A stretch of DNA of 64,000 nucleotides from Amphiscolops sp. MND2022 (taxonomy: Eukaryota): positions 34,968,001 to 35,032,000 of the forward strand of contig OZ076417.1 in the NCBI GenBank assembly GCA_964187785.1, written 5' to 3'. The translations under genes were made by a program, and so were the position numbers. Of the stretch, positions 3,836-62,596 are shown one piece after another. The number at the start of each line of letters is the position of its first letter. Position 1 is the stretch's first letter. The notes below the pieces were generated by a model that had not been told where the DNA came from, did not search any database, and saw only the letters and a program-made list of their open reading frames with translations.

Positions 3836-5430
3836 AAATGTTTCACCATAATAAAAAGAAGCTCTTGCATGAATAATTAACAGCCTTCTCTTTACGTGAC
3901 ATGGGAGCCATATTTTCGTGACTAATATAATTTGAAACCAAGCAAATAGAAACGGATATGATCATAGACGTAACACTAAGCTCATTCGTTAAAGTAAACT
4001 AGTCAAAAAACTGGAAAAACTGAAGTTTAAAGGAATCTGCCAGATATTGATGACAAACCAGATTTTTTTAAATGCCAGAAATTTCTTAAACGTCATTCAA
4101 AAATGAGCAATATTTGCATGACACTACAACGGTATTTTAAAACTTCATTATTGACGTACCCCCTTTGGTAGTTGTTTTCTTACAGTTTAAGATATGTATG
4201 CGGTTTCCAAGACACATGTATAAACATATGTTCTTACTTTCCATAGTTGTTTTCATGGCCATCGAACAGTGGATGCTATTTTGGTGGAAACCAAGACAAT
4301 ATGCTTAAAGTGGTGGAAACCAGGACAATACAGTCAGATTTAAATATTGACATACTGCCTCCTTTAGTAGTTGTTTTCTTACAGTTTAAGATATGTATGC
4401 GGTTTCCACGACACTTGTATAATGATATGGTCTTACTTTCCATAGTTGTTTTCATGGCCATCGAACAGTGAACGCTGTTTTGGTGGAAACCAGGACAATA
4501 CAGTCAGAATTAAACCTTATTTCCCCTGCGGTCGCTTGGGGAGGGGGCATTTTGCGCAATTATTGACAAAATACAATTACCTTTGAAAAAGACGGCATGG
4601 TAAAAGCCATTTTTAATCAAGTAATTAGAACCAAACACTTTAATAAAGGTTTATTCTGACATCAAAGCAGTATTTCAACCAATAAGGGTTAACCAAAAAG
4701 TTTGGCTTTCAATTACATTTCTTCCATTGTTGCCAAACAAACTCAAACGATCCAGTCTCTATTCTTTTTGTCATCATTCAGTCTCTCTCCTCCTTCTGTT
4801 CTCATTCTGCCATCAATCAGTCTCTCTTACCAGGTCATCTGTACTCGGTCTCTCCGCAAACCCTCTTCTGCACCCAGTCTCTCTCCACAAATCATACATC
4901 TGTACTCATTTTCGCTTCTTGCTTCAATGGATAAACTCATCTCACAAAACGGCGAAAACGCAGGTATTAAGTTACATGGAAAGTCGCATACCCCACGCAA
5001 AGTTGGGTTTTGCTACTACTGCCAAGTGTTCTACCCCAACGGGAAAACAAAGTACGAAGTTACACAAAAAAAAACATGTACGATGAAGAGATCATTTTCG
5101 ATGAGACCGGACAATAATCTTCATGTTAGGCCTTTTAGGGTTCAACTCTAAACACAACCAGTACCCCTCAAATCAAATCCAGTACAGCAGAAACCCAAAG
5201 AAGATATTATAAACCCTCTCGAGCCACTCTTTCACTACTGTTTCAACAGAAGAAACTTATTGATTTGTTGATTTGTTCTTTTGATATATGATTTTGTATT
5301 TAGATGATCAATAGGTTTTATTCATATACAGTCATGTTCGGTACAAAGCTCTAAATCATTTGAGTTACCGTAGAGAGAAACGCGCAGAGAGAGGAAAATG
5401 AATATTATATTCCACAAATTTTCGTATTTT
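3835..5430 (-). repeat. Left inverted-repeat arm (R1 modules + ~870-bp unique segment)
   Basis: ~4090-5430 is the reverse complement of ~27590-28720 (paralogous ORFs 4702..5151+ and 27854..28309-). 3835-4020 is the reverse complement of ~20050-20250. Confidence 0.85.
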
Positions 5431-6890: not shown

Positions 6891-7790
6891 TTAAACTGTA
6901 AGAAAACAACTACCAAAGAGGGTAGTACGTCAAAATTGTAAAATCTAATATATCTTAATTTTGTCAAGGGAAATTTGTTCAACTTTCAATGACGTTTTAG
7001 AATATTCTGACATTCATATATATCTGGCTTAATATTGAAATCTGGCCGATTTTGATGAAAAGGTATATTTTCGAATGATTGGCAATTTTAGAGGCCGGCT
7101 TTTGTTTGCTCGAAAGGTATTATGGACATATTTTGTCTCTGACTTCTAAGAGCAACAAATTTTGGCTAAAATGCAATTAAAAAGTGAAACTAATTATGAC
7201 TAATTTTGGTCACAATCGTGAGTACTTTTTTACTCACGATTGGGACCAAAATATCACAGAATCTTTTTTCATTTTAGTATACTGAAAGGCCTCCTTTTTG
7301 TCCTCACGAAAGATTTTAGGAAAATATTTAACTCTGTATTCTATTAACAACGAAATTTGGCTAAAGAAGTTCTAGTCGCACGAAAACACTGAAAACATTA
7401 GCAACGAATATTTGTCTCTTTGACTTGTAATAAACACGAAATTCGTCTCAAAAGTCCTAGTCTCACGAAAACACTGATCAATCTTGCATGGCATTTTATG
7501 AAAACGTGGCATTTATTTAAAACTGTCTTGTCGTCAAAATATGGCAAATGTTTATCAACTGCCATTTTTCCATAAACATTCAACGGATGAGTTCGTTCTT
7601 GGATGGTCCTAAAACGACTGTGGAAAGTAAGACGATATCTTTATACATGTGTCGTGGAAACCACATACGTATCCTAAACTGTTAGAAAACAACTACAAAA
7701 GGTAGTACGTCGATATGTAAGTTTTAATATACCGTTTTAGTGTCATGGAAGTATTGCTCAATTTCGAATGACATTTTAGAATATTCTGAC
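6885..7790 (+). repeat. R1 array
   Basis: R1 core at ~6897 and ~7620, palindrome at ~7204. Abuts the ATG at 7791. Confidence 0.9.
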
Positions 7791-10700
7791 ATGTCTGATC
7801 GGGCTTGCTCATCGCAGTCACAAGAAGTGACCTGTGAGAAATGTGGGCAATTGTTGCCGAACAATAAAAGCAAGAACGAAGCACCGTCATACAAGAAGTA
7901 CAGAAAAAGCCCGACCAACCTAATTTCTTGTACCAATGGCACCTGTGATTATGTCACTGATCGGTTGTTCAGCCTCCAGCGTCATGAGAAGCAGTGTCCA
8001 GGGATGCCCTATGAGGACTGGAAGAAAAACGAAGTGACATGTGAGAATTGTGGACAGTTATTCACTAATAAGAAAAGTCGGATGCGTCATCAAAAGAACG
8101 CTAAATACTGTGTCAAGCAGAAAGCCAAGATTGATGCCGGCATAGAAGTGTCCATGTACAAATATCGTAAGTTATTTAACATTACTGAAGTCATTGAGTT
8201 TTTCGCTCGAATACTTATGATCTGGAAAATTAAAAAGGACCGTGTGTGGGCGGGGGTTTGGGAGGGGGATTAACAAAAAAGATCCATATCAAAATGCTTA
8301 CACATCTTTGTGTTTACACATGATGTTTTCCAGCAGCTGCAAAAGGTCGTCATAAAAGTCCTCATAATTGTCTGAGTTGTGGCAAGTTGTTCGCGTACCA
8401 GTACGTACTCCGGAATCACGTCGCAAGATCACTATCTTGCCAAGTAGCCCTAGCTCCAATTCCTGTTGATGTCACTTTCTCAGAGTATCCCCTATCTCCT
8501 TTTGGTACCACAGGGTACTTCGAATTTTGCGAGAGAATTCCTCTGGAATGTGGGTTTTCTTTCGACGAGTGGCAGGGTCCTCAGGAGAATCCAAGTGTGC
8601 ACTTAGGCTCTCTGTTGCAACACGGCATACCTCTGCTTTGGAAAGGTGGTGCAAATCACTGTCCCGGTATAAAGCTTCCCAAAGTTGACAGGAGTGCGCA
8701 TTTTCCCAGTGAAGTCCAGCAACTCCTGATGGCATCAAATTTGACTGATCCGGAGCAACAACTAGATGTGAAATCGGCAAAGATTGGCACTGTAAGCTTT
8801 TCATTATCTTTTCGCAAAAATACTGTTTCTTTTTAAAAGCCAAATTGTCTCGATTATTGGATTCATGTAGTGTTTTATCTATCATTATTTTCATCTTTCA
8901 CCATGATTATTATTTCACAAAAAATATTCATTACCTCTCTCCAATAAAACGATATGAATACTTCCTAGTTTCAGACGCAATCTCTATCCATACCGGAGTT
9001 CGTGGATGCTTTGAATTCATGTGGCCCCGATGACGTGAATTATCCATTGAATGTTATCGATATCAGGATTAAGCCAAAAGTGAGTTGGGAAACTTGATGA
9101 AAGAATAACCTCTTTTTTCAACTATTTTCATTTTTTTCAAATTAAGTTTTTGTGTTTAAGAAGCTGTACACAGTCCCAAAGATGGTAAGAGACAATTCCA
9201 TTGGGCACCTGGTTGAAAAACTCATTGGGAAGAATAGTCTCGAGCCTTATTCATGTGCCACTTCATATTATCTGCTGATTACGCAGGACTCAGCGCACAC
9301 AACTTGGCACCAAGACTTTTCAGCAACTTCTGTTTGCTATACTGTTCTTCGTGGCGAGAAAAGTTTTTTCTTGGTCAAGCCAACAAAAAAGAATATGGCA
9401 ATATTCGAGAAATGGTCAGATGCAGAAAATGACCAAACGTAAGATTTTTTTATTGAAACTAACGAAGAGTTTATAAAATTTACAAGAGTTTATTATAAAA
9501 TTAAAAATCAATTCTTTTGAACGAAACAATGGACACCTATAACTACAGAAACAGTGCATAAAAACTATTTTTGATTTATTTTGATGTTTTAGGCCCACAT
9601 TCTTCGGTGCGATCAATGAACTGGAAGAAGGATGCCTCCGACTCACTGTTACACCCAGTGACATTCTAGTTATGCCTGCCAACTACCTTCATTTTGTCCT
9701 CACGAAAGGTATTATGGTCTTCTTTAGTCTCTTTGAGTTATGAAAGATGTGTCAGTCGGTCTTTTTTGTAAATCGCTTTTACGTACACTTGACTAATTCT
9801 AAACGATTTTAGCTGACGATCACTTTCTAGTGTTTGATTCATTTTTTGTAACTTTGGCGTTTTTTCTGGTTATGGCACGATGCATAACTTTGCCACAACT
9901 TCATTCTTTCTTTTTCACTCGGCAGTGACAATACTCGTTTGCATGTTTTCCGCGTTCAATTTACACTTTCTCGCGATTTGATTGGTCCGTTTTTTCTCGC
10001 CAATACCGTCCGTTTAATCCGTTTGTTAACTTGTCTTCTACATTTACGGTGAACCAATCTTTGAATAATTCCTCAGATTGAATGATTGATCCTTTACATT
10101 AGGAAGGATGCCTTGACAAATAGTCAGCTATTCCCAGAGTTCTCCCCGGTGTTTGTACAATATGAAAATTGTACGGCAAAAGCCGATCTAATTTACATAA
10201 TTTACATGTCTACCACAACAGCTAATAATTATAATTAGTTTATGGAATAGTTCATTCCGAAATCTGTTAAAAATCGAGATGCGTACGAAATTGTTTTCCA
10301 GATATCATTTTCACACTGTTGGAGGACCGCGCCCAGTCCATTTTTGCTAGCGTTTGATAAACTGCCATTTTCTTAGATTGACATACAACGAATGAGCTCA
10401 TTCTTGAATGGTCCTAAAACAACTGTGGAAAGTAAGACCATATCATTATACATGTGTCGTGGAAACCGCTTACATATCTTTAACTGTAAGAAGACAACTA
10501 CTAAAGGGGGATGGATGGTTGTACGTCAAATTTTAAGTTTTAATGTACCGTTCTGGTGTCATGGAAATATTTTTCAATTTCGAATGGCATTTTGAAATAA
10601 TCTGGCATTTATTAATATCTGGTTAATCATTGAAATCTGGCAGAGTCCGTTAAAGTCTGACTTGCAATAACAAAAACATTGACTCAAAACTAATTTATAA

Positions 10701-12366: not shown

Positions 12367-14895
12367 TCATTGTAAACTGGTTTGATATAAGGATCGATAA
12401 CTATTCGAACACTTGAAGTGACCACGACATGCTACGAAGCTACATCGAATCATGAAAAACCCGAATTCACGATGTTCAGTGAACCTCAAAATTTTGATGA
12501 AGGCATCTTCACCTTCTTTGTTACTTGCGATCACGTCCCATCGTTTCCCAAGCACACTGTCCCATGACTGATTAGACCCTTTGAGGTCATTGCTGATATC
12601 CCCAGAAAACTTCACTGTTTCTTTTGAGGACGTCGTTTCAAAACCACACATTTTACGGGTCAACGGCGTCGCTGGAATTAATGATTTTGTCATTGAATGT
12701 TTTTTCTGGGCAAATCCAACCATCCTTTTGACTGCTGAAAACACCGCGAAAGCTTGGTTAATAGGATGAACTAGAGTGTGGATATTGAATTCTTCTATTT
12801 CGTCATCGATAACTTGAACTTCTAGTGCGGGCATGCGTACTTCAAAATCGGGGTTTGTTTCTCCTATCATTTTAACAAACGCCTTTCGTTTGCTGCAATC
12901 AAAGAACAGTTCTTTTACCTCAAACGTCGCGTTTGCATAGTTGGTGAGAGACCCAACGTTCAGGATGTTGTTATAGCATGGCGCATACTTCAACTCAACG
13001 TTCTCGTCACTGTGTGGTATCAAAGATATTGCATCCACAAAAGGTATTGTTTTTGGGGGGGCATCGCTTTTTTGGTACGGGAGGCCTGGAATCGACTATG
13101 GTTGGAGGTGATTCAAGTTCTTCGTTGGTGTCATCTGGAGCAGCCTCATCAGGCAAGTTTGCCCGTAATTGTCGATAAGAGACAAAAAATTCTTTTCCTT
13201 CGTCATCAACGACCATGCACTGTCGCAGGAACGGATCGTTGATCATCACTGTCGCAGTAACAACTGATCCGCAGCAAGTAATCTCGCAATTTTCGAAGTC
13301 GTCGATACAGTCACAATCTTCGTCATTTGATTGCCAAAAGAAAACTTCGTCATTGCGCATTAACTTCCTTGGATTGAAAGGCAAGCTTCTACCCCTTTTC
13401 TTGCTCAGCGATTCATCCAGTTTTTGGGCTTTTCTAATATTCCAACGTCGCTGAAAAAAGTTGAAAGTTAGCTCTCGCTTTTCAAATTTTTATCAACTTC
13501 AATAATGGGTTTTTTGAAAAAAATATTGTGGAGAATATCAACACGTGGATTGTCATTGAAATCTGGCAGATTTTGCTGAACTGCCATTTTTTCCTAAACA
13601 TTCAACGAATGAGCTTGTTCTTAAATGGTCCTAAAACGATTGTGGAAAGTAAGACCATATCTTTATACATGTGTCGTGGAAACCGCATACATATCTTAAG
13701 CTACAAGAAAACCATTACCAAAGGGGATAGATAGTACGTCAATATTTAAATCTGACTGTATTGTCCTGGTTTCCACCACTTTAAGCATATTGTCCTGGTT
13801 TCCACCAAAATAGCATTCACTGTTCGATGGCCACGAAAGCTACTGTGGAAAGTAAGACCATATCATTATACATGTGTCGTGGAAACCGCATACATATCTT
13901 AAACTGAAAGGAAACAAATACCAAAGGGGGTAAGTACGTCAATATTTAAAATCTAATATACCGTATTAGTGTAATGGAGCAATGACTCAATTTTGAATGG
14001 CGTTTTTTGGAATATTCTGGCAATTATTCATATCTGGCCTAATATTGAAATCTGGCAGATTTGGATAAAATGATACATTTTTGATTGATTAGCAATTTTA
14101 GAGGCCGGCTTTTGTTCGCTCGGAAGATATTATGGACATATTTTCAAAATAGTATGGAGCTAAGACAAGTTGTCTCTCTGACTTCTAATAGCAGCAAAGT
14201 TTGGCTAAAAATGCAAATCAAAAGTGAAATTAATCACGACTTATTTTGGTCCCAATCGTGAGTAATTTTTTTACTCACGATTGGGACCAAAATATCACAA
14301 AATCTTTTTAATTGGAATCATGATTTAACTTTCATTTTTTGAATTTCCATGAATGGAAGTAGAACTTCTCAATTTTTGATGTTAAATGCTAGCCCTATAA
14401 ATAGTATGTCAAGGTTTAAATCTCACTTTTCTGTCTTGCCCTCAGAAATTTTGATTTTTTTGTTTGGCATTTTCTAATATTTTGGCATTTTCGAATATCT
14501 GGCTTGTCGTCTAAATTTTGCAAACTTCGTTAAACTTCCGGTTTCTAGTTAGTTCACTCCAACGAATGAGCGTAGCGAGTTATTCAATTTATAATTCGAT
14601 TTGTGTATTTTTTGTCCTCGAAACCTGTTTAGCATTTCATCGGAACTATGGCCTAAGAAATAAGAGAATTGTGGAAAAGATTTCGAAAAAAGTTTTGAAA
14701 TGTTATATCAACCTCATCTTCCCTGTCGATTTCTGGCACTGTTATGTCAACTGTTTTTCTCGTAGCCCACTCCATCCATTTGATTCTGACACTCCAGTCA
14801 CTCATGATTGCAGTGACTTTTGCAAGCTCCCAAATAAATGTTAGAGGGTCCAGGATATGGACCACTTCGTTCGTTTCGAACTTTTGAAGAAGCAT
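12367..14895 (-). CDS. Multi-Tudor/Royal-family-like protein, 2 exons, one frameshift
   Basis: Exon 1 14895-14713 (FETNEVVHILD..WELAKVTAI..SVRIKWMEW; resembles the PHF20-type Tudor pattern) ends GAG|GTTGAT and joins in phase 0 to ttttttcag|CGA at 13450. A second barrel-like unit follows (ATVMINDP..CMVVDDEGKEFFVSYRQLR). A 1-nt shift in a C7/A5 run at ~13050 links ORF 13007..13384 to ORF 12367..13038. Confidence 0.55.
13530..14330 (+). repeat. R1 array inside the Tudor-like gene intron
   Basis: Two R1 cores (~13640, ~13845) and a palindrome at ~14243. Confidence 0.9.
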
Positions 14896-15452: not shown

Positions 15453-18400
15453 ATGAATAATTCAAATTCCCAAAAGCAAACTCCTGCTCCTGATCCACCA
15501 TTGTCCTACTCATCTGTTCTAAGTAATTTCTCGACTCCATTGACAAACTTGACCACATGGTTGATCGAATCCTCAACTCCTTTGCTCAGCGGAAGTTCAG
15601 AAACTTCTTTGACAAATTCGAAACCCTCATTCGATGCAACAGTCTACTCGCAGAGCTCGCAGACAGTCTACACGCAGAGCTCGCAGAGCTCGATTACTTA
15701 CAATGTAGACGGGATTATGCAAGAAGAGCATCACGAGCCAAATCAGTCAGTCGAAGATCACGCGGTAACTCCTTCTCCTACTCTTGGCATTTCCAATTCC
15801 GTGGGTTTAACAAGCACCACAATTCCGACCTCAAGCCAGAAACAACTTGTTGACTCTTTTGAAGGAAGAGTCTACAATGCAGTCAGAACAACTCCCCCTG
15901 CAAAAAAATGCAAACCAGACTTGAAGACGGATGAAGCCAAAGAATGGCTAAAATCCTTCATAGTTGCCATTACGAGCCGTTACAAAAAGAATGTTAGCGC
16001 CCCAAAGAAGACCCAGATAAACTTTTCCAGAAGTCTGGTGGCCTACCTGTTTTTGTTTGTTGGCGTTGCTGGCATTTTGGACAAGGAAATCAGCAATATC
16101 ACTGTCCACGAGTTGGCTCAAGCCGTGGTACAAATGAAAGACTACCCTGATGATGAAGACATACCATTTTCCGTCGAGCCAAATGAAAGTAAGTAATTAT
16201 GCATAACCTAAACCCTTAACCTCTACAGTCTTTTTTGACCTTTTCGAACACTTGATGAAATTCAAAGTAGCTATCAATTTTGAATGATCCAAACAACAAT
16301 TAGATATATTGTCCTGGTTTCCACCATCTTGAGCTGAATTTGAACATTGTAAACGCCGCGACCAGGCCGCCCAAATTTTGTCCCCTGTGTCCCCAACCAT
16401 CATGACATGTAATAGCAACGAATATTTGTCTCTTTGACTTGTAATAAACACGAAATTCGTCTCAAAAGTCCTAGTCTCACGAAAACACTGATCAATCTTG
16501 CATGGCATTTTATGAAAACATGGCATTTATCCATAACTGTCTTGTCATTAGAATTTGGCAGATTTTGATGAACTGCCATTTTTCCGTAAATATTCAACGG
16601 ATGAGTTCGTTCTTAAATGGTCCCAAAACGACTGTGGAAAGTAAGACGATATCTTTATACATGTGTCGTGGAAACCGCATACATATCTTAAGCTGTAAGA
16701 AAACAACTACCAAAGGAGTAGTATGTCAATATTTAAATCTGACTGTATTGTCCTGGTTTCCACCACTCTAGGCATATTGTCCTGGTTTCCACCAAAATAG
16801 CCTTCATTGCTCAATGGCCACGAAAGCGACCGTGGAAAGTAAGACCATATCTTTATACATGTGTCGTGGAAACCGAATACATATCTTAAACTGTAAGAAA
16901 ACAACTACCAAAGGGGATAGTACGTCAATATTTAAAACCGTATTAACCGTCAAATGGTCATGGAAATATTGTTCAGTGTTGAATGGCGTTGTAGAATAAC
17001 ATGTCATTTAATATTATTTGGCTTGTCATCAAAATCTGGCAAATTTTGTTTAGGTGTGTTTAGATTTTCGATTGGTTAGAGTTCTTAGAGGCCAAAATGT
17101 TCTGGGCCTATTTTGTCTTTCTGACTAATAAAAATTTTTGAAAAAACTGAAAACTCGAAACTAACTTACAAGTTGAATAGATGTCTTTTTTTGCAGATTC
17201 TGTTTCTCGAGTACAATACAAGCCACCACGCTGGCTAATCGAAGGTTTGGTTGAGTATGCCAGCCACACGAGACCTGACTTTCTCAGCAAAACCGAAGGT
17301 GTGAAATTTCAACGATGTGTCAACGAAAGTGATGACCGACCAGTCGTGACAGAGCTCCTGTTCGTCAATTCTGTTGGGAAGTCTTGTTTTAGACCGAGCC
17401 ATGTTGTCGACCAGTATTTGATCCCTGTACGTTTGTTTTTTTTTGTCATTTAAATTTATATATAGTTCGGAGTTTTCAAAACAACTTCGATTGAAAAATC
17501 TACATCTACTAAACCATTGTAGTTCTAGTGCAAAAGATCAAAGATTTATTCGAAAGCATGTGTTTCAGGTACTTCAACAATGTAAAAAACCAGCCAATCA
17601 GCTGAAGTTCAAATTGGAACTCATCTATCCAATTGTTGACGACCCTGAAGCACGATTGCCAAAATTGAAAAATCAAATCAAGGAAGTGCAAGGAAAATTT
17701 GGCAATGAATTTGACCAGGATACCATCAAAACATGCGTGAGAAAGCATCAAGATGCTCAACGATACGCACGACAGTCAGCTCGAGCCACAACGTTCTTCA
17801 AATGCATGAACGGGAAATGTGACTTGAACATCTTGGAGAAAAGAATCGAAGGATTTTTCCAGAGGCAGAAATGGACAACACCAGAAGACGTCAAACAGGA
17901 TATTAGAAAAGTGTTTCTGTTGGTTCTACCTATGCTACAAAATCCAGATTCGAGAAGGATGGGCAGTGATGGTTCTGCTAAAATAATTTACAAAGGGATG
18001 GCACATAACATGGATTTCGAGTGCCAGACCGTCCTATTCGAACGATGTGACACGCAGAGCTGGCCAGGCGTATGTCCAGCCACTTTCAAATCTTATGGAC
18101 GCGGAGTGGTCAGCACACAGAAGTTTTTTAAAAACGAGATTGTTCTTGACTACCACGGTCAAATACTTGAGAAAATGACATTTACACAAGCTCTGGCGAT
18201 GGAAGGCGTACAGCCCGAGTATCTGATGGAGGTACGTAATCTAAAGTTTAAAGTTTTTTGTTAGATACATACCAAGTGAATAAAGACAAATAAAAATAGA
18301 TCTAAAAAGTCAAAGTATGAGTATTTGTTCTTTTATCAATTTTGGACCTAGAGAGCTAAAAGTGAAGAAGAAAAAAATTATTAGTTCACTAGGACCTAGC

Positions 18401-19403
18401 TAAAAGAAAGTACACGAAACTTTTTTGTGCTTAATACGATCTTTTTCTAAGTTGATAATTTTTTGTATATTTCCATTTTTTTTTCATTATTCGCTCTGAC
18501 GTAAACTCTACCGATTCTTCAAGAATTCAAATTTCTATCTTTTTTGTTACAATAATCCATTTTAGTCAAATTGGCGTTTGAATTCAATTTGGCGTTTTGA
18601 GATAAAATAGCACGTTAAGTAATTTCAGCAGAATTTTCACTATTTACACACTCGTTGAATACTGTCAATACGCGTCTAGTTGTATTTCGCTTACCGCTCT
18701 GGCTTTCTCGCAATTTGATTGGCTCGCTTCGTTTCAAACGTTTTGAAGTTCGTCAATAACGTTTTTCTAATCCGCCTGTGAATTCTTCTACTACGTTTAT
18801 AGTAAACCTATCTCTAAACATCTCTTCTAATTTTATAGATGTTCCATTACAATGGGATGGATGCCTTGATGAATAGTCCGCCATTCCCAGCGTTCGCCCC
18901 GGAGTTTGTACCACATTAAACTTATATGGTAATAGACGATCTATTCAACGTGTTAAACGGCTTGATGTCGTTTTATTTGCACTCAGAACGCTTTGTAAAG
19001 CCTTGTGATCAAATACGACTCCAAATTGTGTACCGCATACATAATTTTTGAAATGATCCCACGACAGCTAGTAACTCCAATTCATTTTTGGATTATTTCA
19101 TTCAAATTCTGTTAAAAATTGTGGGTTTTTGTAAGGTGTTCCTGTAACTTCTTTGTTCCAGGTGAAAGGTCCGGGCGGAGACTGATCAACGCTTCCTCCG
19201 AGATATGTGAAAGTCACCCAAAAAATCTATGTTTGGGACGCCTTATTAACCACTGTTCCAAAGATGCAAACATAAAGCAAACTGACATAGTGCTTTATGA
19301 CGAGTCCCGAGTTTGCTGCTTCAGGGCTATAAGAGATATAAGCCCTTTCGAAGAATTGAAATTCGATTACGAGGACCCAACAGCGCGGTCCCTTTTTTCG
19401 TGA
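15453..19403 (+). CDS. Ser/Thr-rich N-terminus + degenerate tyrosine-recombinase-like region + SET domain (SETD8/PR-Set7-like), 4 exons, one frameshift
   Basis: Exons 15453-16188, 17197-17426 (phase-1 join is exact), ~17473-18231 (acceptor uncertain) and 19162-19403. SET motifs GRGVVST, LDYHG, LGRLINHC and EELKFDY are all present, with no post-SET cysteines, as in SETD8. One base is missing near 19175 (ccgggcgg); one extra G restores EVKGPGRRLINAS. Confidence 0.8.
16300..17100 (+). repeat. R1 array inside SET gene intron 1
   Basis: R1 cores at ~16630 and ~16830. 16400-17100 is closely matched by ~59200-59830. Confidence 0.9.
18560..19110 (+). repeat. R2 dispersed repeat inside SET gene intron 3
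   Basis: Collinear similarity to 9780-10330. Confidence 0.7.
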
Positions 19404-19589
19404 AAGGTGACTTGCTGACAAATATCTTCCTGTGCTTTTTCAAGAGTCTATTTATTCCAAACACTTTTTTTTGTTTTTTAAAGCTACTCGTTTTGTTCAC
19501 TTTTCGAATAATTATCAGATATATATGAACCAGACTTTCAACCAGAGGATCAGAATACATGTAAGTTCAGTCAATTATCCATAGCACCC

Positions 19590-20250
19590 TTTGTCCTGGT
19601 TTCCACCAAAATAGCATTCACTGTTCGATGGCCACGAAAGCGACTGTGGAAAGTAAGACCATATCTTTATACATGTGTCGTGGAAACCGCATACACATCT
19701 TAAACTGTAAGAAAACAACTACCAAAGGGGATGATAGATAGTACGTCAATATTTAAATTTGACTGTATTGTCCTGGTTTCCACCACTCTAAGCATATTGT
19801 CCTGGTTTCCACCAAAATAGCATTCACTGTTCGATGGCCACGAAAGCTACTGTGGAAAGTCAGACCATATCATTATACATGTGTCGTGGAAACCGCATAA
19901 ATATCTTAAACTGTAAGAAAACAACTACCAAAGGGGGTAGTACGTCAATATGTAACTTTTAATATACCGTAGTAGTGTCATGGAAATATTGCTCAATTTT
20001 GAATGACGTTTTAGAAAATTTTGGCATTTCAAAAAACTGGCTTGTCATCGAAATCTGGAATATTCCTTTAATCTTCAGTTTTTCGACTACTTTACTTTAA
20101 CGAATGAGCTTCGTGTTACGTCCATAATTATATCAGTTCGTATTGGCTTGGTTTTAAAATATTTTAGTCACGAAAATAGGGATTCCACGTCACGTAAAGA
20201 GAAGGTTGTTAATTATTTATTCAAGAGCATCTTTTTATTATGGTGTTAAA
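19590..20250 (+). repeat. R1 array plus tail
   Basis: R1 cores at ~19640 and ~19850. Tail 20050-20250 is inverted relative to 3835-4020. Confidence 0.85.
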
Positions 20251-20338: not shown

Positions 20339-23300
20339 ATAGTCACTGTGACCTTCATACATCTTCATCACTAGTTGAGTTGAATACAACGTTGTTGAAA
20401 TCTCATATCAACGCACTTTTGATGGACCCCTTAGCACTTTGGAATGCCCATTCTGTACAAGTCGACAAAAATTTGCTGTTTATCGACTGCAAAATGTTCG
20501 AAGTCATGGCCGAGAAACGATTCACCAACAAATACAGAAAATTCGAAAAGATCATTGACGATGCATTCGCCGGGTGTGGGTTGAATACCAAAGACTTACT
20601 CCGGAGAATTCCCATGAAAGGTCAAAGCAAACCGACTGTGTGTATAGCAGTGAGTAATTTTTTTTCTAATCATCATTTTTTGCAAATGTCTATCTTTGTC
20701 ATATTTGGCGCGATAATACTTTTTTCTAATTCGTGCTTCGCTGGCGTTTTGTATCCAATTCGTTAATTGAGTGTTTCGCTTCAAAGTCGGTTAAAAATCT
20801 GGATGCGTACGCAATTGGTTTTCAATTGTTTTCTTCATTGTGTTGTAATACCGCCCCTAATCCTTGTTTGCTTGCATCGCAAATGATTCGCAACATGCGG
20901 TTTCTTTTATATTGCTAAAAATACATTTACTAAATACATTACTAAAACATTTACATATCCACCACAAAAACCGTTTCCGAAAAAATATTCTTTACCGGGA
21001 AAAATTGCGATGTTTCTAATCTTCCGAGGGTTCAAGGATTTCCAATGGACCGACGCAAGGAAGAGATTTGTGGAATGCTTTGTCCCTCGATATTTGATTC
21101 CTTACGAAGATACTTTCAATTTTCCTCCTCTTGTAACACCAACCTTGAATCCCCTTGCAATACGTACCTCGAATCTGTCTGCGCCACCAACAATGGTCCT
21201 TGAAACAATGGATTCACATACACCACCAACAATGGTCCTTGAAACAATAAATTCGTTTGCAACACGAAGAATGGACCTTGGAACAATGGATTCGCATACA
21301 CCACCAACAATGATCCTTGAAACAATAAATTCAATTGCAACACCAACAATGGACCTTGGAATAATGGTTTCGCATGCACCACCAACAATGGACCTTGAAA
21401 CAATGGATTCCCATGCACCACCAACAATGGACCTTGAAACAATAGATTCGCATGCGCCACCAACAATGGACCTTGAAACAATGGATTCGCATGCACCACC
21501 AACAATGGACCTTGAAACAATGGATTCCCATGCACCACCAACAATGGACCTTCAAACAATGGATTCGCATGCACCACCAACAATGGACCTTGAAACAATG
21601 GATTCGCATGCACCACCAACAGTGGACCTTGAAACAATGGATTCGCATGCACCACCAACAATGTACCTTGATGCAGCGACAAGTCCAAATCCTAAAATGA
21701 GGAGAACAAAAAAATTGAACAAAGAAGCAGCCACTTGTTTCTGGAAAAGGGTCATCGATGAGGCCAACGATAATAAAGAAATTGGGTTCAATGAGTTTAT
21801 AGAACAAGTGAAAGACAATATGATTAAACGGAAATACCAGGGATTCACAAAGAAGGAAGAAGAGAATGTGGTGAAAATTCTAATCGAGCGTCTTTTTGAG
21901 AATCGAGGATCGACCAAGGAAATCAGTCACATTCTATCACTTACTGCTCAAACTGGAAATATAGAGGAAGTCATAAAACTTATCAGATCGAAACTTTCGG
22001 TAGTTGGCTTGGGATACAACGTAGTACCCTGTATACGCTTGATCAAGAAATCGACAGCTGAAATCCAGACCTATTTTGTTTCACTATGCCATCCCGAAAG
22101 AACGTTCTCCGGTTTCCGATGCGATCTGATAAAATTTGTTGAGCTGGCCGCATACCTGCTCGGAATGTATGATTTATGTGGTTTGAGAATTGATATCTGG
22201 GGCGACGGTTGTGAAATTGGAGGCCTGGAAACAACCCGTTTTGCCTTTCGAGTGTTTTCGGAAAAAATTAGTTGCCAGTCATCAAGTTCGGTGTTCTGTT
22301 TTGCATCGTATCGAGGAAAAGACAGCCGATTCGCGATGGAACAGAACCTTGGACCAACTATAGCTGGTGATCAAAGTTCGGGTTGGCTCTACCAGAAAAC
22401 GTCGGAGTTGTCAGATCGTGGAGTTAAACTAACCTACAGTGGAGATACACCAGTTTTGCTACGCCTGATACTGGGAATTTCCTGTGAAACGAATTTCAAA
22501 TCAAAAATGCCACTTCATATTCCTGATAATAGCTTTTTGCCAACAAATTGCCACCCTGAAACAGGTCTGAGAACCGATCTCAAGATACCTTTCCGAGAAG
22601 AACTGCCAAAAACATCCCTTGTTTATTTCCAAGACGTGCGATGTATATGCCCTGACCCGACGCACATGATCACCAGATGTGTTGAAAACGACTTGAGGAG
22701 AGTGGCGCAGAAAATAATCACTGACAAGTATCCCGATTATGGCCCCTCACTCAAAGCCTTTGAAGAAAATCTTACACGACGTGATGCAAAAAGGCCATAT
22801 TTCCAGTTCAATGTGAACACAAAACTAGGTTCTGGTGTTGGTACTGTAAACAGTGTGTCATTAGCCGGAAGTAATGCCCTATCTATTATAGCAGAAAAAG
22901 AGGAATTGGCTGGCGCAAATGATTGTTCAATAGGGAATCTTTTTGAAGATGTATGGGATCCCAAAAACGATGTTGTTATTGGGAGTGAATCTGCTGCTAG
23001 TGCACAAATACTAAAACAACTTCTCCCAGAACTTTTCGATAAGCCTCACCCTAGTGACAAGACATCCGCCAATCTCTACATGTCGAAGACAGATGCATGT
23101 GAATTGCTGCGCTCCAGCCTGAACCGCTGTGCAATTCTCTTGAGATCTGAGCAGTTTGACGCCCAATGCTACAAAAAATGGGCTGAAATATATTATCAGA
23201 CAACCATTTTGTTATTTGGTGAATGCTCATTGACACTATATAAGTTGAAGCTCGCAATGATGCCACAGATTGTAGAAGGAGGGTTTGTGGAAAGACCTTT

Positions 23301-24387
23301 TGACCACATGTGCGAAGGGCTTGAAAAATCCAATCATCACGCAAATCGCTATTTCCAGACAAAAACCATGCGTGGTGGCTTACCATAAAGATCCTCTTTT
23401 CCTGAAATTGTCATCTTCATTTGGAAAGTTCCTCCGTGCATCAATTGAATTGAAAACAAAGAAGTATGAATGTTTGGAAATATCTGAAATACTTGAGAAA
23501 CTTGTTGATGATTTGGATGCCAAATACCCCGGACCAACATACCTCGAAATTTGCAAGACCCCAATTTCCTCGACTTCTCTTGCAATCGGGAAGTCGCATC
23601 CCGATTCTCAATTTTTGAGTGGTATGAGGTTCTTTTCAATTGGAAGATTAGGTGTAGTCGATAGGTGTAGTAGATTTCGTTAACGAAGGATGTTCTGATT
23701 AAACTCATCAACGAAATGGGGGGCATATTCATTGAACACGATCAAGCAAGCAGACACCCTCATGAAGACACATTCACGACTGCCTAATTGCTTCGTTCTG
23801 GTCAAAGACGAAGAAGACCTAGTAATCGCCACAGGCGCTGTGCAAGAAATTGAAGACCTGAAAAAGAAAAGGCCGCTGGCGAAAAAAATAAAGCGAAGTA
23901 AGTCAAGTCTTTCCACGTCCCAGTCTTCAGATTCGGACAGTCAATACCCATCATCGCAATTCACAGCAAGACAGAAAAAGAAACCGCTCAATACTCACAA
24001 ATTGCTCAAAAATTTGCCCAAGGAGGTCTAACTTTTTTGAAGAAAAATTTTCTCATGGATGTCAAAAAAGTAGTTACGTTGTTAGACCCCAAAGATTACA
24101 CCATTGCCCCCGGAAGTAATTTTCGTCGAGCCAGAGTAAATGATATGAGACCACTCTTCCTTGATCAAATATCAGGCAAAAAATCAAATGAGAATATATC
24201 GGCTGTGGCTTATCTCAAACGATACAGAAATGGACAAATAGATTACCAAAACTCTTTTTCGAGAATGATGATGACACTTTTGCCGGAAAAATTGACAACA
24301 TTGATGATGATGACGACGACGTCGATGAAGAATGTTCTCAGATCACTTTGTAGACTCCAGAGTTCAACAAAAAATGGGACACCGTAA
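20339..24387 (+). CDS. RAG1/Transib-like DDE transposase-fold protein with 13-aa repeats and a frameshifted C-terminal BRCT-like domain
   Basis: Exon ~20339-20649 (donor GTGAGT), then the 792-aa ORF 21010..23388. Motifs align by eye to RAG1 core: IWGDG (ESCDG, D600), YSGDT (GYDEK, D708), PDPTH (IDALH), LYKLKLAMMP (NYFHKTLAHVP), CEGLEKSNH (SEGNESGNK, E962). Downstream frames give LSGMRFFSIG..LTKDVLIKLINEMGG..CFVLV..FLKKNFLMDV..LLDPKDY (BRCT-like), with about 4 frameshifts after 23385. Confidence 0.65.
21184..21672 (+). repeat. Coding minisatellite, 39-bp unit x ~12.5 (PPTMDLETMDSHA)
   Basis: Twelve full in-frame units plus one partial in ORF 21010..23388. Confidence 0.95.
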
Positions 24388-24639
24388 TTATGTTGTTGAT
24401 ATTTGTGTTCATATCTAGCGATGCATTACTATTTCGAAATAATACTATTAGAATTCTGTTCTTGAATTTGCGTATCTCTGTGATAAACATAACTCCAATT
24501 CAAGTTAGTTGTAAGAGACTATATTTTTCATACTCTGCTGAAGATCAGATACAGTGAAGATACGATACCAACACATCGTACCCCGTTACGTCGCGAGAAG
24601 TAGAGGTTATGATAAGCCATGGTAAACCAATCGAAAAGT

Positions 24640-27490
24640 TGGAGTTAACCAAAATCTGCCAGTTTTTATTTAAGAGCAAAACAATAAAAAATGCCACAAA
24701 TTTACCAAACTCCATTCAAAAATGAACAATAGTTCCATGACACTAATACGGTATTTTAAAATTTACATATTGAAATATTATCTCTGGTAGTTGTTTTCTT
24801 ACAGTTTAAATTATGTATGCGGTCTCCACGACCCATGTATAATGATATGGTCTTACTTTCCACAGTAGCTTTCGTGGCCATCGAACAGTGAATGCTCTTT
24901 TGGTGGACACCAGGACAATATGCTTAAAGTGGTGGAAACCAGGACAATACAGTCAGATTTAAATATTGACGTACTATCTTACCTTTGGTAGTTGTTTTCT
25001 TACAGTTTAAGATATGTATGCGGTTTCCACGACACATGTTTAAAAATATGGTCTTACTTTACATTGTCGTTTTGGGGCCATTTTAAAAACGAACTCATCC
25101 GTTGAATGTTTACGGAAAAATGACAGTTCATCAAAATCTGCCATAATTTAATGACAAGACAGTTATGGATAAATGCCATGTTTTCATAAAATGCCATGCA
25201 AGATTGATCAGTTGTTTCGTGAGACTAGGATTTTTGAGACGAATTTCGTGTTTATTACAAGTCAAAGAGACAAATATTCGTTGCTAACAGTCTCGCAGCG
25301 CCTTGTTAAAGGGCCCAAAGACTAATAACAGAACTAATGATCTGTCTAGTTAAAGAGAGATTTGATGAGTGAATACTTTCAACTGACGCAACTGTATTTT
25401 ACGTTTAGACCATATCGCGAATGATCTTTCACTCTTTTTCTTTTTCTACGGTTGTTTTTACTAACAATCTGCTAGCGATCTCGAGGTTTGTTCTAGAGCT
25501 AGCCTTTTGCCACATGGACCAAATTTAGTCATCAATAATTTCACGTTTGAATTGCATTTTTAGTCAAAAGTTGTTGCTATTAAAAGTCAGAGACAAAATA
25601 AGTCCATTATATCTTTCGAGCGAACGATTCCCGGCCTCTAAAAACGCTAACCAATCAAAAATGTACCATTTCATCAAAATCTGCCAGATTTCAATAACAA
25701 GTCAGATATAAATGAATGTCAGAATATTCTAAAACGTCATTCAAAGTTGAGCAAAATTTCCATGACAATATTAAGGTATATTAGATTTTAAATATTGACG
25801 TACTATATCCCCTTTGGTAGTTGTTTTCTTACAGTTTAAGATATGTATGCGGTTTCCACGACACATGTATAATGATATGGTCTTACTTTCCACAGTAGCT
25901 TTCGTGGCCATCGAACAGTGAATGCTATTTTGGTGGAAACCAGGACAATATGCTTAAAGTGGTGGAAACCAGGACAATACAGTCAGATTTAAATATTGAC
26001 GTACTATCCCCTTTGGTAGTTGTTTTCTCACAGTTTAAGATATGTATGCGGTTTCCAGGACACATGTATAATGATATGGTCTTACTTTCCAAAGTTGTTT
26101 TCATGGCCATCGAACAGTGAATGCTATTTTGGTGGAAACCAGTACAAAATGCTTAAAGTGGTGGAAACCAGGACAATACAGTCAGATTTGCATAATAACG
26201 TACTACCCTTTGGTAATGGTTTTCTTGTAGTTTAAGATATGTATGTGGTTTCCATGACACATGTATAAAGATATCGTCTTACTTTCCACAGTCGTTTTAG
26301 GACCATCCGAGAACGAACTCATCCGTTGATTGTTTATGGAAAAATGGCAGTTGAAAAAAATTTGCCATATTTCGATGACAAGACAGTTTCAAATAAATGC
26401 CACGTTCCCAAAAAATGCCATGCAGAAATGTTTTCAGTGTTTTCGTGTGACTAGGACTTCTTTAGCCAAATTTCGTCGTTATTAGAATACAGAGTTAAAA
26501 TATGTCCCTAATATCTTTCGTGAGGAAAAAAAAGAGGGCTTTCAGTATACTAAAATGAAAAAAGATTGTTACATTTTTATCCCAATCGAGAGTAAAAAAA
26601 TATTCACGAATGAATAATTTCACTTTTGAATTGCATTTTTAGTCAAATTTCGTTGTTATTAGAAGTCAGACAGTTAAAATATGTCCTTAATATCTTTCGT
26701 GAGGACAAAAGGGAGGCCGTTCAGTATACTAAAATGAAAAAAATTTTGTGATATTTTGGTCCCAATCGTGAGTAAAAAAATTACTCACGATTGGGACCAA
26801 AACTATTTGTGATTAATTTCACCTTTGAACTACTTTTTCAGCCAAAATTCGTTGCTATTAGAAGTTAGAGAGACAAAAAGTGTCCTCAATATCTTTCGTG
26901 CGGACAAAAGCCGGCCTCTAAATTGCTGACTATTCGAAAATGTACCATTTTATCAAAATCGGCCAGATTTCAATTTTAAGGCAGATATCAATAAATGCCA
27001 GAATATTCTAAAACGCCAATCAAAATTGAGTGATTGTTCCATGACACTAATACGGTATATTAAGATTTAAATTTTGACATATACTCCCTCTGGTAGTTGT
27101 TTTCTTACAGTTTAAGATATGTATGCGGATTCCACGACACATGTATAAAGATATGGTCCTACTTTCCATTGTCGTTTTAGTACCATTCAAGAACTAGCTC
27201 ATTCGTTAAATGCTTTTGAAAAACAGGCAGTTGACAAAAATTTGCTAAATTTTGATGACGAGGTAGTTATAAATATATGCCATGTTTTCTTAAAATGCCG
27301 TGCAAAACTGTTTCTGTGTTTTGGTGAGACCAAGACCTTTTTAGCCGAAATTCGTGAAATGCTATTGGAAAATGGCAGTTGATAAAAATCTGCCACGTTT
27401 TGACAAAAAGACAATTCTGAATAAATGCCTTTTTTTATAAATTGCTTGCAAACTTGTTTTCAATGTTTTGTTTTCATTAGACTAGGACTT
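24640..27490 (-). repeat. Large R1 array in reverse orientation
   Basis: At least six reverse R1 cores (~24830, 25030, 25870, 26070, 26270, 27150) and a palindrome at ~26756. ~24700-25800 is an inverted copy of ~58450-59500. Confidence 0.9.
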
Positions 27491-27589: not shown

Positions 27590-28720
27590 TATATAATATT
27601 TATTTTCCTCTCTCTGCGCGTTTCTCTCTCTACGGTAACTCAAACAATTTAGAGCTTTGTACAGAAAATGACTGTATATGAAAAAATTAATTGATCATTT
27701 AAATACAAAAATATATATATATATCAAAAGAACGAATCAACAAATCAATAAGTTTCATCTGTTGAAGCAGTGAAAGAGTGGCTCGAGAGGGCTTATAATA
27801 TCTTCTTTGGGTTTCTGCTGTACTGGATTTGATTTGAGGGGTACTGGTTGTGTTTAGAGCTGAGCCCTAAAAGGCTTAACATGAAGATTATTGTTCGGTC
27901 TCCAGATGTCATCGAAAATGATCTCTTCATCGTACGTGTTTTTTCGTGTAACTTCGTACTTTGTTTTCCCGTTGGGGTAGAACACTTGGCAGTAGTAGCA
28001 AAACCCAACTTTGCGTGGGGTATGCGACTTTCCATGTAACTTATTAACTGCGTTTTCGCCGTTTTGTGAGATGAGTTTATCCATTGAAGCAAGAAGCGAA
28101 AATGAGTACAGATGTATGAATTGTGGAGAGAGACTGGGTGCAGAAGAGGGTTTGCGGAGAGACCGAGTATAGATTACCTGGTAAGAGAGACTGATTGATG
28201 GCAGAATGAGAACAGAAGGAGGAGAGAGACTGAATGATGACAAAAAGAATAGAGACTGGATCGTTTGAGTTTGTTTGGCAACAATGAAAGAAATGTAATT
28301 GAAAGCCAAAGTTTTTGGTTAACCCTTATTGGTTGAAATACTGCTTTGATGTCAGAATAAAATTCGAATAAAGTGTTTGGTTCTAATTACTTGATTATAA
28401 ATGGCTTTTACCCTGCCGTCTTTTTCAAAGGTAATTGTATTTTGTCTGTAATTGCGCAAAATGCCCCCTCCCCAAGCGACCGCAGGGGAAATAAGGTTTA
28501 ATTCTGACTGTATTGTCCTGGTTTCCACCAAAATAGCATTCACTGTTCGATGGCCACGAAAGCGACTGTGGAAAGTAAGAACATATATTTATACATGTGT
28601 CTTGGAAACCGCATACATATCTTAAACTGTAAGAAAACAACTACCAAAGGAGGTAGTACGTCAATATGTAAATTTTGATATACCGTATTAGTGTCATGGA
28701 AAAATTGCTCAAGTTTGAAA
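27590..28720 (+). repeat. Right inverted-repeat arm
   Basis: Reverse complement of ~4090-5430, e.g. ttcctctctctgcgcgtttctctctctacggtaactcaa versus ttgagttaccgtagagagaaacgcgcagagagaggaa. Confidence 0.85.
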
Positions 28721-31230: not shown

Positions 31231-31430
31231 NNNNNNNNNNNNNNNNNNNNNNNNNNNNNNNNNNNNNNNNNNNNNNNNNNNNNNNNNNNNNNNNNNNNNN
31301 NNNNNNNNNNNNNNNNNNNNNNNNNNNNNNNNNNNNNNNNNNNNNNNNNNNNNNNNNNNNNNNNNNNNNNNNNNNNNNNNNNNNNNNNNNNNNNNNNNNN
31401 NNNNNNNNNNNNNNNNNNNNNNNNNNNNNN
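31231..31430. other. Assembly gap (200 N)
   Basis: Run of N. Confidence 1.
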
Positions 31431-35315: not shown

Positions 35316-36168
35316 CCCCCCCTTTTGAGAGAGAACAAGCTGTAGGGGTAGGTGAAAGGTGACGACGGAGGTTTTCAGTAGCGGGTGGTAGAGTAAATGA
35401 AGTCGGTAGTGGACAGCGTCTAAATGGATTGAAGGTAGTGGAAACTTGTGGCTGTAAATGAAGCGGCCGTTACACTCGGAAGCATGAATGAACAAGATGA
35501 AGCAGTCAATAGCAGGCACGCGGAAGTTGGAGCGTAGAGTATTTAAAGAAATAGTTGGACAGCCATGTCATCCATGTAGTGCGCATTGAGTCGAATGTTT
35601 ATTTAAGCAATTTTTCATCGATCATCGGCAGTTGATTGATTTGTTGTGTTGCTATCGTGAGTATCAGTCGCGTTTATTAGTATCTCCTGCATTGATTTGA
35701 GCCTTGAACTTGTTTCCATTCATCTTCGTTTGTCATCCGTTGGCTTTGCTCATTCTTCCACAATGATAAAGTGTATCCCTTTTTTGTTTTGTCAGGGAGT
35801 CCGGTATTCTTTGGTTTTGCAGCTATTGTGGTTTAGTAAACGGGTAAATGTACTTTAATTGTCAGGTGTCCATCATTCCAGAGATAGGTAGGGGCGTTTA
35901 GCGTTTGGGTGGGAAACACGACTGTCTTCTTTCTGCATATTTAAAATAGCATTTGATATTAGTTGGATTTTAACCAAGGTGGTTATCCATGAATTTCCAG
36001 TGTTACTTGAGTAAGACTGTTTGACAGGGGGGTTAGATATCCATTGTTTGTTGAAATAGGTGATCAGTCTATAACAACTGTGAAAGGAAGAATGAGCTTT
36101 CGCAGTCGTGTATTCTTGAATTTGTTGTTTTACCCGGAGTGTTGTGGTTATCAGTTACTTCACCCAAG

Positions 36169-43254: not shown

Positions 43255-43527
43255 GGAAAAATTGGAAGGTTTAAGTTGAATTGAGTATGTTTAAGATTCT
43301 AGAATAATTCAATGATTCAAGATTAAAGTAGTGAAAGCGGCTTGTAATGTTGGTAGCTCACGATCTTGTGTCGTGTCTAGTTTTTTCTGATGGTGTCATT
43401 ATAAACGCGTGTTAGCACCTTTTTCACTAGCCAATAGTATTCTCTCTACTAATTCGTGTTAATTCACACTTTACCTGTTTTCTTCTATTTTTGCCGACTG
43501 GTTGTTACCGTCGTCGCAGGTACTAGT

Positions 43528-49138: not shown

Positions 49139-49350
49139 ATTGGAATCTTTTTTGACACAAAAGTTTTTTTTCGATCAACCGCAAAATTGATCCCGAAGAA
49201 CTTCGACGAAGAGAAAAATTAAAATTTAAATATCAGTTCAATCAAGATTTCGTTTTTCCGCAATTAAATGTTCGATGTTTGAACTAAATATTGGCTTTAG
49301 CTTCAATCTTCGTGTACCAATAGTTTTTAAAGATTTCCTAATAAAAAATT

Positions 49351-62564: not shown

Positions 62565-62596
<32 letters not shown>

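What the first reader, a model, noticed from the sequence alone, without database searches (positions are those of the whole stretch)
15453..19403. SETD8-like methyltransferase fused to an apparently dead tyrosine-recombinase-like domain
Seen: the ORF at 15453 splices in phase across an R1 array into the SET gene. The middle reads AYLFLFVGVAGILDKEISNITVHELAQA..LLFVNSVGK..LLNHCSSSA, which resembles YR box I (G.R.G...N.T..E), the LF...G segment and box II (L.H...A), but the catalytic Arg and Tyr are not evident. Inference: an ancestral integrase-SET fusion retained as a DNA-binding scaffold. The YR resemblance is from recall and unverified.
Basis: partly seen in the sequence, partly recalled or inferred. 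Interest (0 to 1): 0.72.

Follow-up and report, generated by a model that had tools for sequence, protein, structure and literature searches.

The report
Transposon SET gene with recombinase-like relic
This is a slightly broken copy of a histone-methyltransferase gene carried by a very abundant giant jumping element of a marine animal; part of the protein in front of the enzyme domain is predicted to fold like the first half of a tyrosine recombinase but lacks its catalytic residues, and that resemblance is only moderately supported.

Summary
The four-exon gene is real (15453-19403, +). Its C-terminus is a KMT5A/SET8-type SET domain with the cofactor and catalytic motifs present. It is not a host ortholog. 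It is a multicopy cargo gene, always about 3 kb upstream of the transposase ORF of a giant DNA transposon that this scan has already described on other DNA.

The third, "box II" LLNHCSSSA, lies in intron 2. This copy also has a 1-bp deletion in exon 4 that stops the frame after 7 codons; other copies are open.

The recombinase idea is partly supported:
- Two proteins with recombinase-like motifs fused to a SET domain align to the same segment.

Against it:
- Z stays below 8.
- A second model did not reproduce the match.
- No sequence profile finds a recombinase.
- The second half is a different helical domain.
- No catalytic Arg, Lys or Tyr is conserved.

Odds of recombinase descent: about even.

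The parts
15453..16188 (+). Exon 1. About 160 S/T/Q-rich, probably disordered residues come first. The conserved pre-SET region starts at about 15939.
   Evidence: ORF and donor GTAAGT at 16189. It is conserved in L001, L004, L005 and L006, mostly with in-frame indels in the low-complexity part. By eye it is homologous to P0012 residues about 180-240; MAFFT misplaced the exon 1 fragment.
16189..17196 (+). Intron 1, holding R1 repeat units (16412-17057) whose number varies between copies.
   Evidence: Repeat families D2 and D3. L001 has one unit fewer. Contig joints skip 165-495 bp here, and contig depth is 20-50 times that of the exons.
17197..17426 (+). Exon 2. It encodes a beta-hairpin end, a helix (..EYASHTRPDF) and the strand LLFVNSVGK. 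This is the best conserved part of the recombinase-like half.
   Evidence: Acceptor tttgcAG and donor GTACGT. Y, R, F, T, F, N and F are invariant across 13 relatives. hhalign places the recombinase-motif proteins P0077 and P0073 on this segment.
17427..17568 (+). Intron 2.
   Evidence: Stops in exon 2's frame. Indels that are not multiples of three and an in-frame TAA in other copies. Variable length between copies. Absent from the intronless relatives P0012 and P0089.
17569..18231 (+). Exon 3. It encodes the helical domain (RYARQSARA 17761-17787, FFQRQKW 17854-17874), a linker, the KMT5A-type N-flank helix (QSWPG 18055-18069) and the first SET strands (GRGVV, DYHG).
   Evidence: Acceptor tttcAG and donor GGAG|GTACGT. 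dN/dS is 0.32-0.47 between open copies. It matches KMT5A chains at residues 174-204. It has 77 relatives in the 1.84-billion-protein library.
18232..19161 (+). Intron 3, with a 688-bp insertion (18428-19115) specific to some copies.
   Evidence: The insertion is absent from L002, L003 and L005. A contig joint runs 18375 -> 19111. A minus-strand ORF at 18753-18914 looks, by my own reading, like a retroelement remnant.
19162..19403 (+). Exon 4. It is the C-terminal half of the SET domain (GRLINH 19236-19253, FDYED 19362-19376). This copy is broken by a 1-bp deletion at about 19171.
   Evidence: Pfam SET, E 2e-7. Alignment with L001, L002 and L005 shows the missing C. About half of the contig depth carries the extra C.

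Best explanation
The interval is one copy of the methyltransferase cargo gene of a multicopy giant DNA transposon. The gene has four exons. In this copy a 1-bp deletion in exon 4 breaks the frame.

In intact copies the protein is built from four parts:
1. About 160 disordered residues.
2. An alpha/beta domain of about 160 residues. Its predicted fold is that of the first half of a tyrosine-recombinase/topoisomerase-IB catalytic domain, without the catalytic Arg and Lys.
3. A helical domain of about 120 residues with near-invariant Arg, Ala and Trp positions.
4. A KMT5A/SET8-type SET domain with its cofactor and catalytic motifs present.

Most likely mechanism (inferred): the recombinase-like half no longer cuts DNA. 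It serves as a DNA- or chromatin-binding or oligomerising module that brings a SET8-type lysine methyltransferase to the element's own chromatin or to its integration or excision sites. The neighbouring transposase does the DNA breakage and joining.

Shown: the gene model, the broken frame, the SET class, the multicopy state and synteny with the transposase ORF, conservation of the pre-SET region across diverged lineages, and the absence of recombinase catalytic residues.

Inferred: recombinase ancestry, the binding role, and the substrate.
For: Gene model and break.

Multicopy state and synteny:
- Near-identical ORFs come from many contigs.
- Contig depths are in the thousands.
- The order orf12367(-) / SET(+) / transposase ORF(+) holds where the fetched flanks reach: the transposase ORF follows the SET gene in L001, L002, L004, L005 and L006; the upstream ORF is seen in L001, L005 and L006, and at 38% identity in the diverged intronless locus L007.

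SET class:
- Pfam SET.
- Only KMT5A/SETD8 chains and 4ldg appear below E 0.001.
- The DYHG, GRLINH and ELxFDY motifs align.

Constraint:
- dN/dS is 0.23-0.47 in exons 3 and 4 between open copies.
- Relatives at only 24-40% identity keep invariant Y, R, F, T, F, N and F, and near-invariant R, A, W and D.

Recombinase-like fold:
- The model of P0012:160-490 has pLDDT 79.

Link to proteins that combine recombinase motifs with SET:
- P0077 and P0073 were retrieved by exon 3.
- Family SET versus P0073 SET is about 30-35% identical, E 1e-12 to 1e-19. They share an insertion (C..HP) before GRLxNH that human KMT5A lacks.
- hhalign of the family against the recombinase-motif part of each hits the same YF..R...FFVN segment. 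Scores are 20.9 and 22.3 against shuffles of 13.4+-2.5 and 13.0+-2.2.

Precedents:
- DUF3504 is a catalytically dead Crypton recombinase kept in animal genes (PMC3212892).
- SET genes are carried by oomycete transposons (PMC12730594).
Against: - Foldseek found nothing with E below 0.1 in the PDB or BFVD.
- A second model (P0044; N-half pLDDT 50-80) gave no recombinase match at all.
- Pfam, PHROGs and PDB sequence or profile searches find no recombinase in the family.
- The same searches find none in the supposed recombinase parts of P0077 and P0073 either. Their recombinase identity rests on motifs I read by eye and on one weak SAM-like hit, E 0.003.
- The domain order in P0073 is probably SET before the recombinase-like part, the opposite of this gene.
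- No RNA run was available, so splicing and expression are not shown.
- No biochemical evidence exists for the substrate or for DNA binding.
Confidence: 0.5

Rival explanations
1. The pre-SET domain is not derived from a recombinase. It is a lineage-specific alpha/beta plus helical domain of unknown origin. It may still bind DNA or chromatin. Its first half merely shares a common helix-hairpin-helix arrangement with recombinases and topoisomerases IB.
Against: Sixteen chains of one superfamily in the top 50 of 48,161, all in register on the same sub-domain, is hard to get by chance. Two independent recombinase-motif SET proteins align to the same segment above 99-100% of shuffles.
Confidence: 0.4
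2. One reading: a complete tyrosine-recombinase catalytic domain with box I, the LF..G segment and box II (LLNHCSSSA), merely mutated at Arg and Tyr.
For: Box I and LF..G fall where the fold match predicts them.
Against: Box II is intronic. The region that follows in the real protein does not superpose on the second half of any recombinase.
Confidence: 0.05
3. The gene is the animal's ordinary KMT5A ortholog with a long N-terminal extension.
For: KMT5A is the closest solved SET domain.
Against: The similarity is weak (28 bits). There are many copies at 81-97% identity, several with frameshifts. The position is fixed beside a transposase ORF in every copy fetched. Contig depth is in the thousands.
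Confidence: 0.02

Closest known systems
KMT5A / SETD8 / PR-Set7 (H4K20 mono-methyltransferase)
   Same: The only class of solved SET domains hit by sequence. It shares the N-flank helix, GRGV, (D/E)YHG, GRLINH and ELxxDY motifs.
   Different: About 25-30% identity. There is an extra C..HP insertion before GRLINH. Phe or Trp sits at what I recall to be KMT5A's Tyr334 product-specificity switch (window: KFDY). There is a pre-SET region of about 450 residues. The gene is multicopy and transposon-borne, not an ortholog.
DUF3504 (PF12012), the catalytically dead Crypton tyrosine recombinase of ZMYM2-4, QRICH1, KCTD1 and KIAA1958 (PMC3212892)
   Different: No Pfam DUF3504 hit. Only the first half of the fold is recognisable. 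It sits in a transposon gene rather than a domesticated host gene.
Proteins P0077 and P0073, with recombinase-like motifs fused to a KMT5A-like SET domain. Earlier notes of this scan call such genes Crypton-like SET-recombinase transposons.
   Same: Related SET domain. P0077 has the same order, recombinase-like part then SET. The YF..R...FF(V/I)N segment aligns.
   Different: They keep candidate catalytic motifs (P0077: GHRPED, LLGH, EHY; P0073: HSTDMAKKHY). This family keeps none. The recombinase identity of those parts was not confirmed by any profile here.
SET genes carried by HarbingerS and MuDR transposons of Phytophthora (cited in PMC12730594), and TET/JBP genes carried by fungal DNA transposons
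   Same: A cut-and-paste transposon carrying its own chromatin or DNA-modification enzyme.
   Different: A different host kingdom, transposase superfamily and SET class. No recombinase-like domain is reported there.
MrpR and SroF, regulators of SPbeta-type prophages (8a0a, 9rd5)
   Different: They are bacterial phage proteins with a full-length fold and no SET domain.

Membership tests
SET-domain lysine methyltransferase, KMT5A/SET8 type | SET domain profile match | tested here: met
   PF00856 on exon 4 (E 2e-7, 31.8 bits, cut-off 22.4) and on full-length relatives (E 1e-8 to 1e-12).
SET-domain lysine methyltransferase, KMT5A/SET8 type | Closest solved relatives are KMT5A rather than other SET classes | tested here: met
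   P0012 SET: 15 distinct PDB sequences below E 0.001, all KMT5A/SETD8 plus 4ldg. Window exons 3 and 4 give the same targets weakly.
SET-domain lysine methyltransferase, KMT5A/SET8 type | Cofactor and catalytic motifs (xYHG, RLINH, ELxxDY) | tested here: met
   DYHG 18148-18159, GRLINH 19236-19253, ELKFDY ending at about 19373. In this copy they are out of frame because of the 1-bp deletion.
SET-domain lysine methyltransferase, KMT5A/SET8 type | H4K20 mono-methylation activity | not testable with these tools
   Needs an enzyme assay on nucleosomes or H4 peptides.
Host KMT5A ortholog | Single-copy host gene outside mobile DNA | tested here: not met
   Many copies at 81-97% identity. The transposase ORF lies about 3 kb downstream in L001, L002, L004, L005 and L006.
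Tyrosine recombinase (PF00589 and relatives) | Sequence-profile match to a recombinase family | tested here: not met
   No Phage_integrase or DUF3504 hit at E up to 10 for exons, full-length relatives or isolated sub-domains. Nothing in PHROGs. Nothing with PDB profiles.
Tyrosine recombinase (PF00589 and relatives) | Catalytic-domain fold, first half (helices, three-strand sheet, helix) | tested here: inconclusive
   [not shown]
Tyrosine recombinase (PF00589 and relatives) | Catalytic-domain fold, second half (box II helix to the Tyr helix) | tested here: not met
   No recombinase alignment runs past model residue about 165. Residues 158-281 match FF-type and other helical bundles.
Tyrosine recombinase (PF00589 and relatives) | Catalytic residues Arg I, Lys, His-x-x-Arg, His/Trp, Tyr | tested here: not met
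The turn where Arg I is expected reads VPP, IKE, TLA or VAG. There is no conserved Lys in the hairpin. No conserved Tyr is found: the only candidate column is F in 14, Y in 6 and other residues in 8 of 28 sequences.
DUF3504 (dead Crypton recombinase) | PF12012 profile match | tested here: not met
   No hit.
DUF3504 (dead Crypton recombinase) | Recombinase fold with the catalytic tetrad lost | tested here: inconclusive
   [not shown]
Cargo gene of the giant RAG1-fold/BRCT transposon described earlier in this scan | Constant position next to the transposase gene in independent copies | tested here: met
   tblastn of the window ORF 21010-23385 finds it downstream of the SET gene in L001, L002, L004, L005 and L006. 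The RAG1 fold of that ORF was not tested here: Pfam gives nothing and the claim comes from note s1-178891.

The most novel reading that the evidence does not exclude
A cut-and-paste (RAG1-fold) transposon has taken over the recombinase-SET gene of a different, Crypton-like transposon. It let the recombinase die catalytically and kept its DNA-binding half as the targeting module of a SET8-type histone methyltransferase. This would be one mobile element domesticating another's enzyme in order to write a chromatin mark on itself.
Probability: 0.3. Interest if true: 0.8.

Novelty: new variant of a known kind. Interest (0 to 1): 0.55.

Why it matters
Transposons that carry their own chromatin writers are known from oomycetes and fungi, and dead recombinase domains are known from domesticated host genes (DUF3504). 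If the recombinase ancestry holds, this family would join the two themes inside an active animal transposon. It would give a tractable case for two questions. How does a mobile element direct a histone mark to itself? Can one transposon recycle another's recombinase as a binding module? If the ancestry does not hold, what remains is a conserved, unclassified 280-residue domain that travels with a SET8-type enzyme. That is still a useful target for structure and binding studies.

Tried and rejected
1. Reading LLNHCSSSA as box II. Rejected, because it is in an intron. One database ORF (P0010) does read through intron 2 in another copy, but only because of indels. The window, L004, L005 and L006 have stops there.

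2. My own idea that the near-invariant Trp of FFQRxKW replaces the catalytic Tyr, about 30-34 residues after a conserved Arg. Dropped. hhalign puts this motif on the stretch just upstream of the SET domain of P0073 (KKQDW), which points to an extended N-flank of SET rather than a recombinase Tyr helix.

3. Rescue of the window's frameshift by the alternative donor GT at 18236. This would restore the frame (..YLMEV-R-ERSGRRLINAS). It is possible on paper but untested. The site is weak and other copies do not need it.

4. Sequence routes to a recombinase. All were blank: Pfam on exons and on full-length relatives, per-member scans at E 10, PHROGs, two PDB profile searches, and an HMM against P0073 and P0077 with 4,000 shuffles (P0073 ranked 15th, P0077 195th).

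5. Replicating the fold match with P0044. This was uninformative, because the N-half was modelled at low confidence.

6. RNA evidence. No RNA run holds the stretch. The four runs laid on it are contigs of DNA-like depth without exon-exon joints.

7. MAFFT placement of the window's exon 1 fragment failed twice, so exon 1 is not in the alignments used for folding.
Full report
**What is in the window**

The + strand between 15453 and 19403 holds a four-exon gene.
- Exon 1 (15453-16188) ends at a consensus donor, GTAAGT, in phase 1.
- Exon 2 (17197-17426) follows the acceptor tttgcAG and ends at GTACGT in phase 0.
- Exon 3 (17569-18231) follows tttcAG and ends at GGAG|GTACGT in phase 0.
- Exon 4 (19162-19403) follows ttccAG.

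Intron 1 holds about 200-bp R1 units (16412-17057). These recur all over the window. Their number differs between copies (and the joints). Their contig depth is 20-50 times that of the exons.

**Two corrections to the observation**

First, the string LLNHCSSSA (17506-17532), read as box II, is in intron 2.
- In exon 2's frame the intron stops after eight codons.
- The other copies differ there by 2-bp and 6-bp indels and carry an in-frame TAA.
- Intron 2 is 142 bp here, about 294 bp in L002 and about 670 bp in L005.
- Relatives encoded by uninterrupted ORFs (P0012; and P0089, from the same assembly as most copies) pass from the exon 2 end directly into the exon 3 start.

Second, this copy is broken. 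Compared with L001, L002 and L005 it lacks one C at about 19171, so exon 4 reads VKGPGGD-stop. L005 reads on to the normal stop. About half of the contig depth in four public runs carries the extra C. L005 is open in all four exons. L001, L004 and L006 have other frameshifts.

**It is transposon cargo, not a host gene**

- The word search found only near-identical ORFs (81-97%) on many contigs.
- Where the fetched flanks reach, the SET gene lies between a minus-strand ORF (window 12367-13038; seen in L001, L005 and L006) and the ORF at 21010-23388 (seen in all five copies with flanks).
- A diverged intronless lineage (L007) keeps the upstream partner at 38% identity.
- Earlier notes of this scan (s1-178891, s1-151489, s1-180112 and others) describe that ORF as a RAG1-fold transposase with a BRCT tail, and the whole as a giant transposon carrying SET and JmjC genes. 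I confirmed the synteny, not the fold.
- A 738-bp inverted repeat (4338-5075 / 27936-28673, 96%) may mark the ends.
- dN/dS between open copies is 0.23-0.47 in exons 3 and 4, and 0.55-1.0 in exons 1 and 2.

**The SET domain**

Pfam finds SET in exon 4 and in all full-length relatives. Against the PDB, the only sequences below E 0.001 are KMT5A/SETD8 chains and 4ldg. The GRGV, DYHG, GRLINH and ELKFDY motifs align. "SETD8-like" is therefore right, at low identity.

The residue I recall to be KMT5A's Tyr334 product-specificity switch is Phe here. This point rests on my own knowledge and was not tested.

**Is the region before it a dead tyrosine recombinase?**

The exhaustive search with exon 3 gave 77 relatives. 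They include continuous full-length proteins with the same layout: P0012, P0044, P0032, P0031, P0047 and P0089.

Sequence methods see no recombinase.
- Pfam on exons, on full proteins and on sub-domains, up to E 10.
- PHROGs.
- PDB profiles.

An AlphaFold model of P0012:160-490 (30-row alignment, pLDDT 79, pTM 0.48) gave no significant Foldseek match. The all-against-all structural search was more informative.
- That is 16 of the top 50 rows among 48,161 chains.
- Each alignment covers the chain segment that I recall holds Arg I and the hairpin Lys: XerD 122-238, Cre 142-279, human topoisomerase I 461-584. Each stops before box II.
LLFVNSVGK is the strand-turn after the long helix, as in recombinases.

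The catalytic residues are absent. The turn reads VPP, IKE, TLA or VAG. The hairpin has no conserved Lys. No Tyr is conserved.

**A sequence bridge**

Exon 3 also retrieved P0077 and P0073. In both, a KMT5A-like SET domain is joined to a region with recombinase-like motifs (GHRPED...LLGH...EHY in P0077; HSTDMAKKHY in P0073).
- The family's SET is 30-35% identical to P0073's (E down to 1e-19). They share an insertion before GRLxNH that human KMT5A lacks.
- hhalign of the family against the recombinase-motif part of each protein picks the same segment both times, YF..R(P).F...FFVN against EFYYKHCR...PFFIN and VYYKSVR...RFFIS. Scores of 20.9 and 22.3 were reached by 1/100 and 0/100 shuffles.

**Caveats**

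- Z stays below 8, which the tool's own notes call compatible with a common arrangement.
- A second model (P0044) had a low-confidence N-half and returned no recombinase.
- The recombinase identity of P0077 and P0073 is itself not confirmed by any profile here.
- P0073 probably has the order SET then recombinase-like part, with its second SET coming from a tandem neighbour.
- No RNA data exist for the splice model.
- An earlier follow-up on another copy (s1-175618) judged that the recombinase reading did not hold. A first-reader note (s1-172891) raised the same idea as here.

**Verdict**

The gene, its SET class and its transposon context are solid. This copy is a pseudogene by one base.

The "dead recombinase" reading is half right in anatomy: box I and LF..G yes, box II no. 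It is about even in probability as a statement of descent.

The most likely role is a non-catalytic binding module that directs a SET8-type methyltransferase. The neighbouring transposase would do the DNA chemistry. That role is inferred, not shown.

The closest precedents are DUF3504 (PMC3212892) and the SET genes of oomycete transposons (PMC12730594). My four full-text paper searches turned up no paper describing this combination.

The N runs at 31231-31430 and 56230-56429 were left untouched.

Noticed in passing
window 16412-17057, also 1667-2594, 7398-7809, 13420-14150, 19589-20077, 24616-27313, 58309-59809, 62324-63482: The about 200-bp R1 repeat fills introns and spacers of the element on both strands. 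In public runs its contig depth (150,000-470,000) is 20-50 times that of the SET exons. It is therefore far more abundant than the element itself: a satellite- or MITE-like unit, or a repeated binding site.
   Followed up: partly
window 18428-19115: A 688-bp insertion in intron 3 that is absent from copies L002, L003 and L005. The minus-strand ORF at 18753-18914 looks, by my own reading, like a retroelement remnant.
   Followed up: partly
window 12367-13038 (-): A 223-residue ORF with no Pfam hit lies upstream of the SET gene in L001, L005 and L006. It is kept at 38% identity next to the diverged intronless SET gene in L007. It looks like a conserved partner gene of unknown fold.
   Followed up: partly
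L007:10001-11698 and L009:140-2068: An intronless lineage of the same gene (P0089 in the same assembly as the window-like copies, and P0012), about 40% identical to the window's protein. Spliced and unspliced versions therefore coexist in this data.
   Followed up: partly
window 21102-21764: At least 12 tandem copies of a 39-bp unit lie inside the 5' part of the 792-residue ORF beside the SET gene, giving a 13-residue coding repeat.
   Followed up: no
window 36000-44000: A block with raised G+C (0.41-0.49), strong positive GC skew (+0.15 to +0.20) and negative AT skew (-0.17 to -0.26), unlike the rest of the window.
   Followed up: no
window 48100-56074: Three tandem copies of a unit of about 2.05 kb (97-100% identical). 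The ORF at 48227-49138 (-) has a PAN domain (Pfam E 4e-5).
   Followed up: no
   Followed up: no
[not shown]
   Followed up: partly
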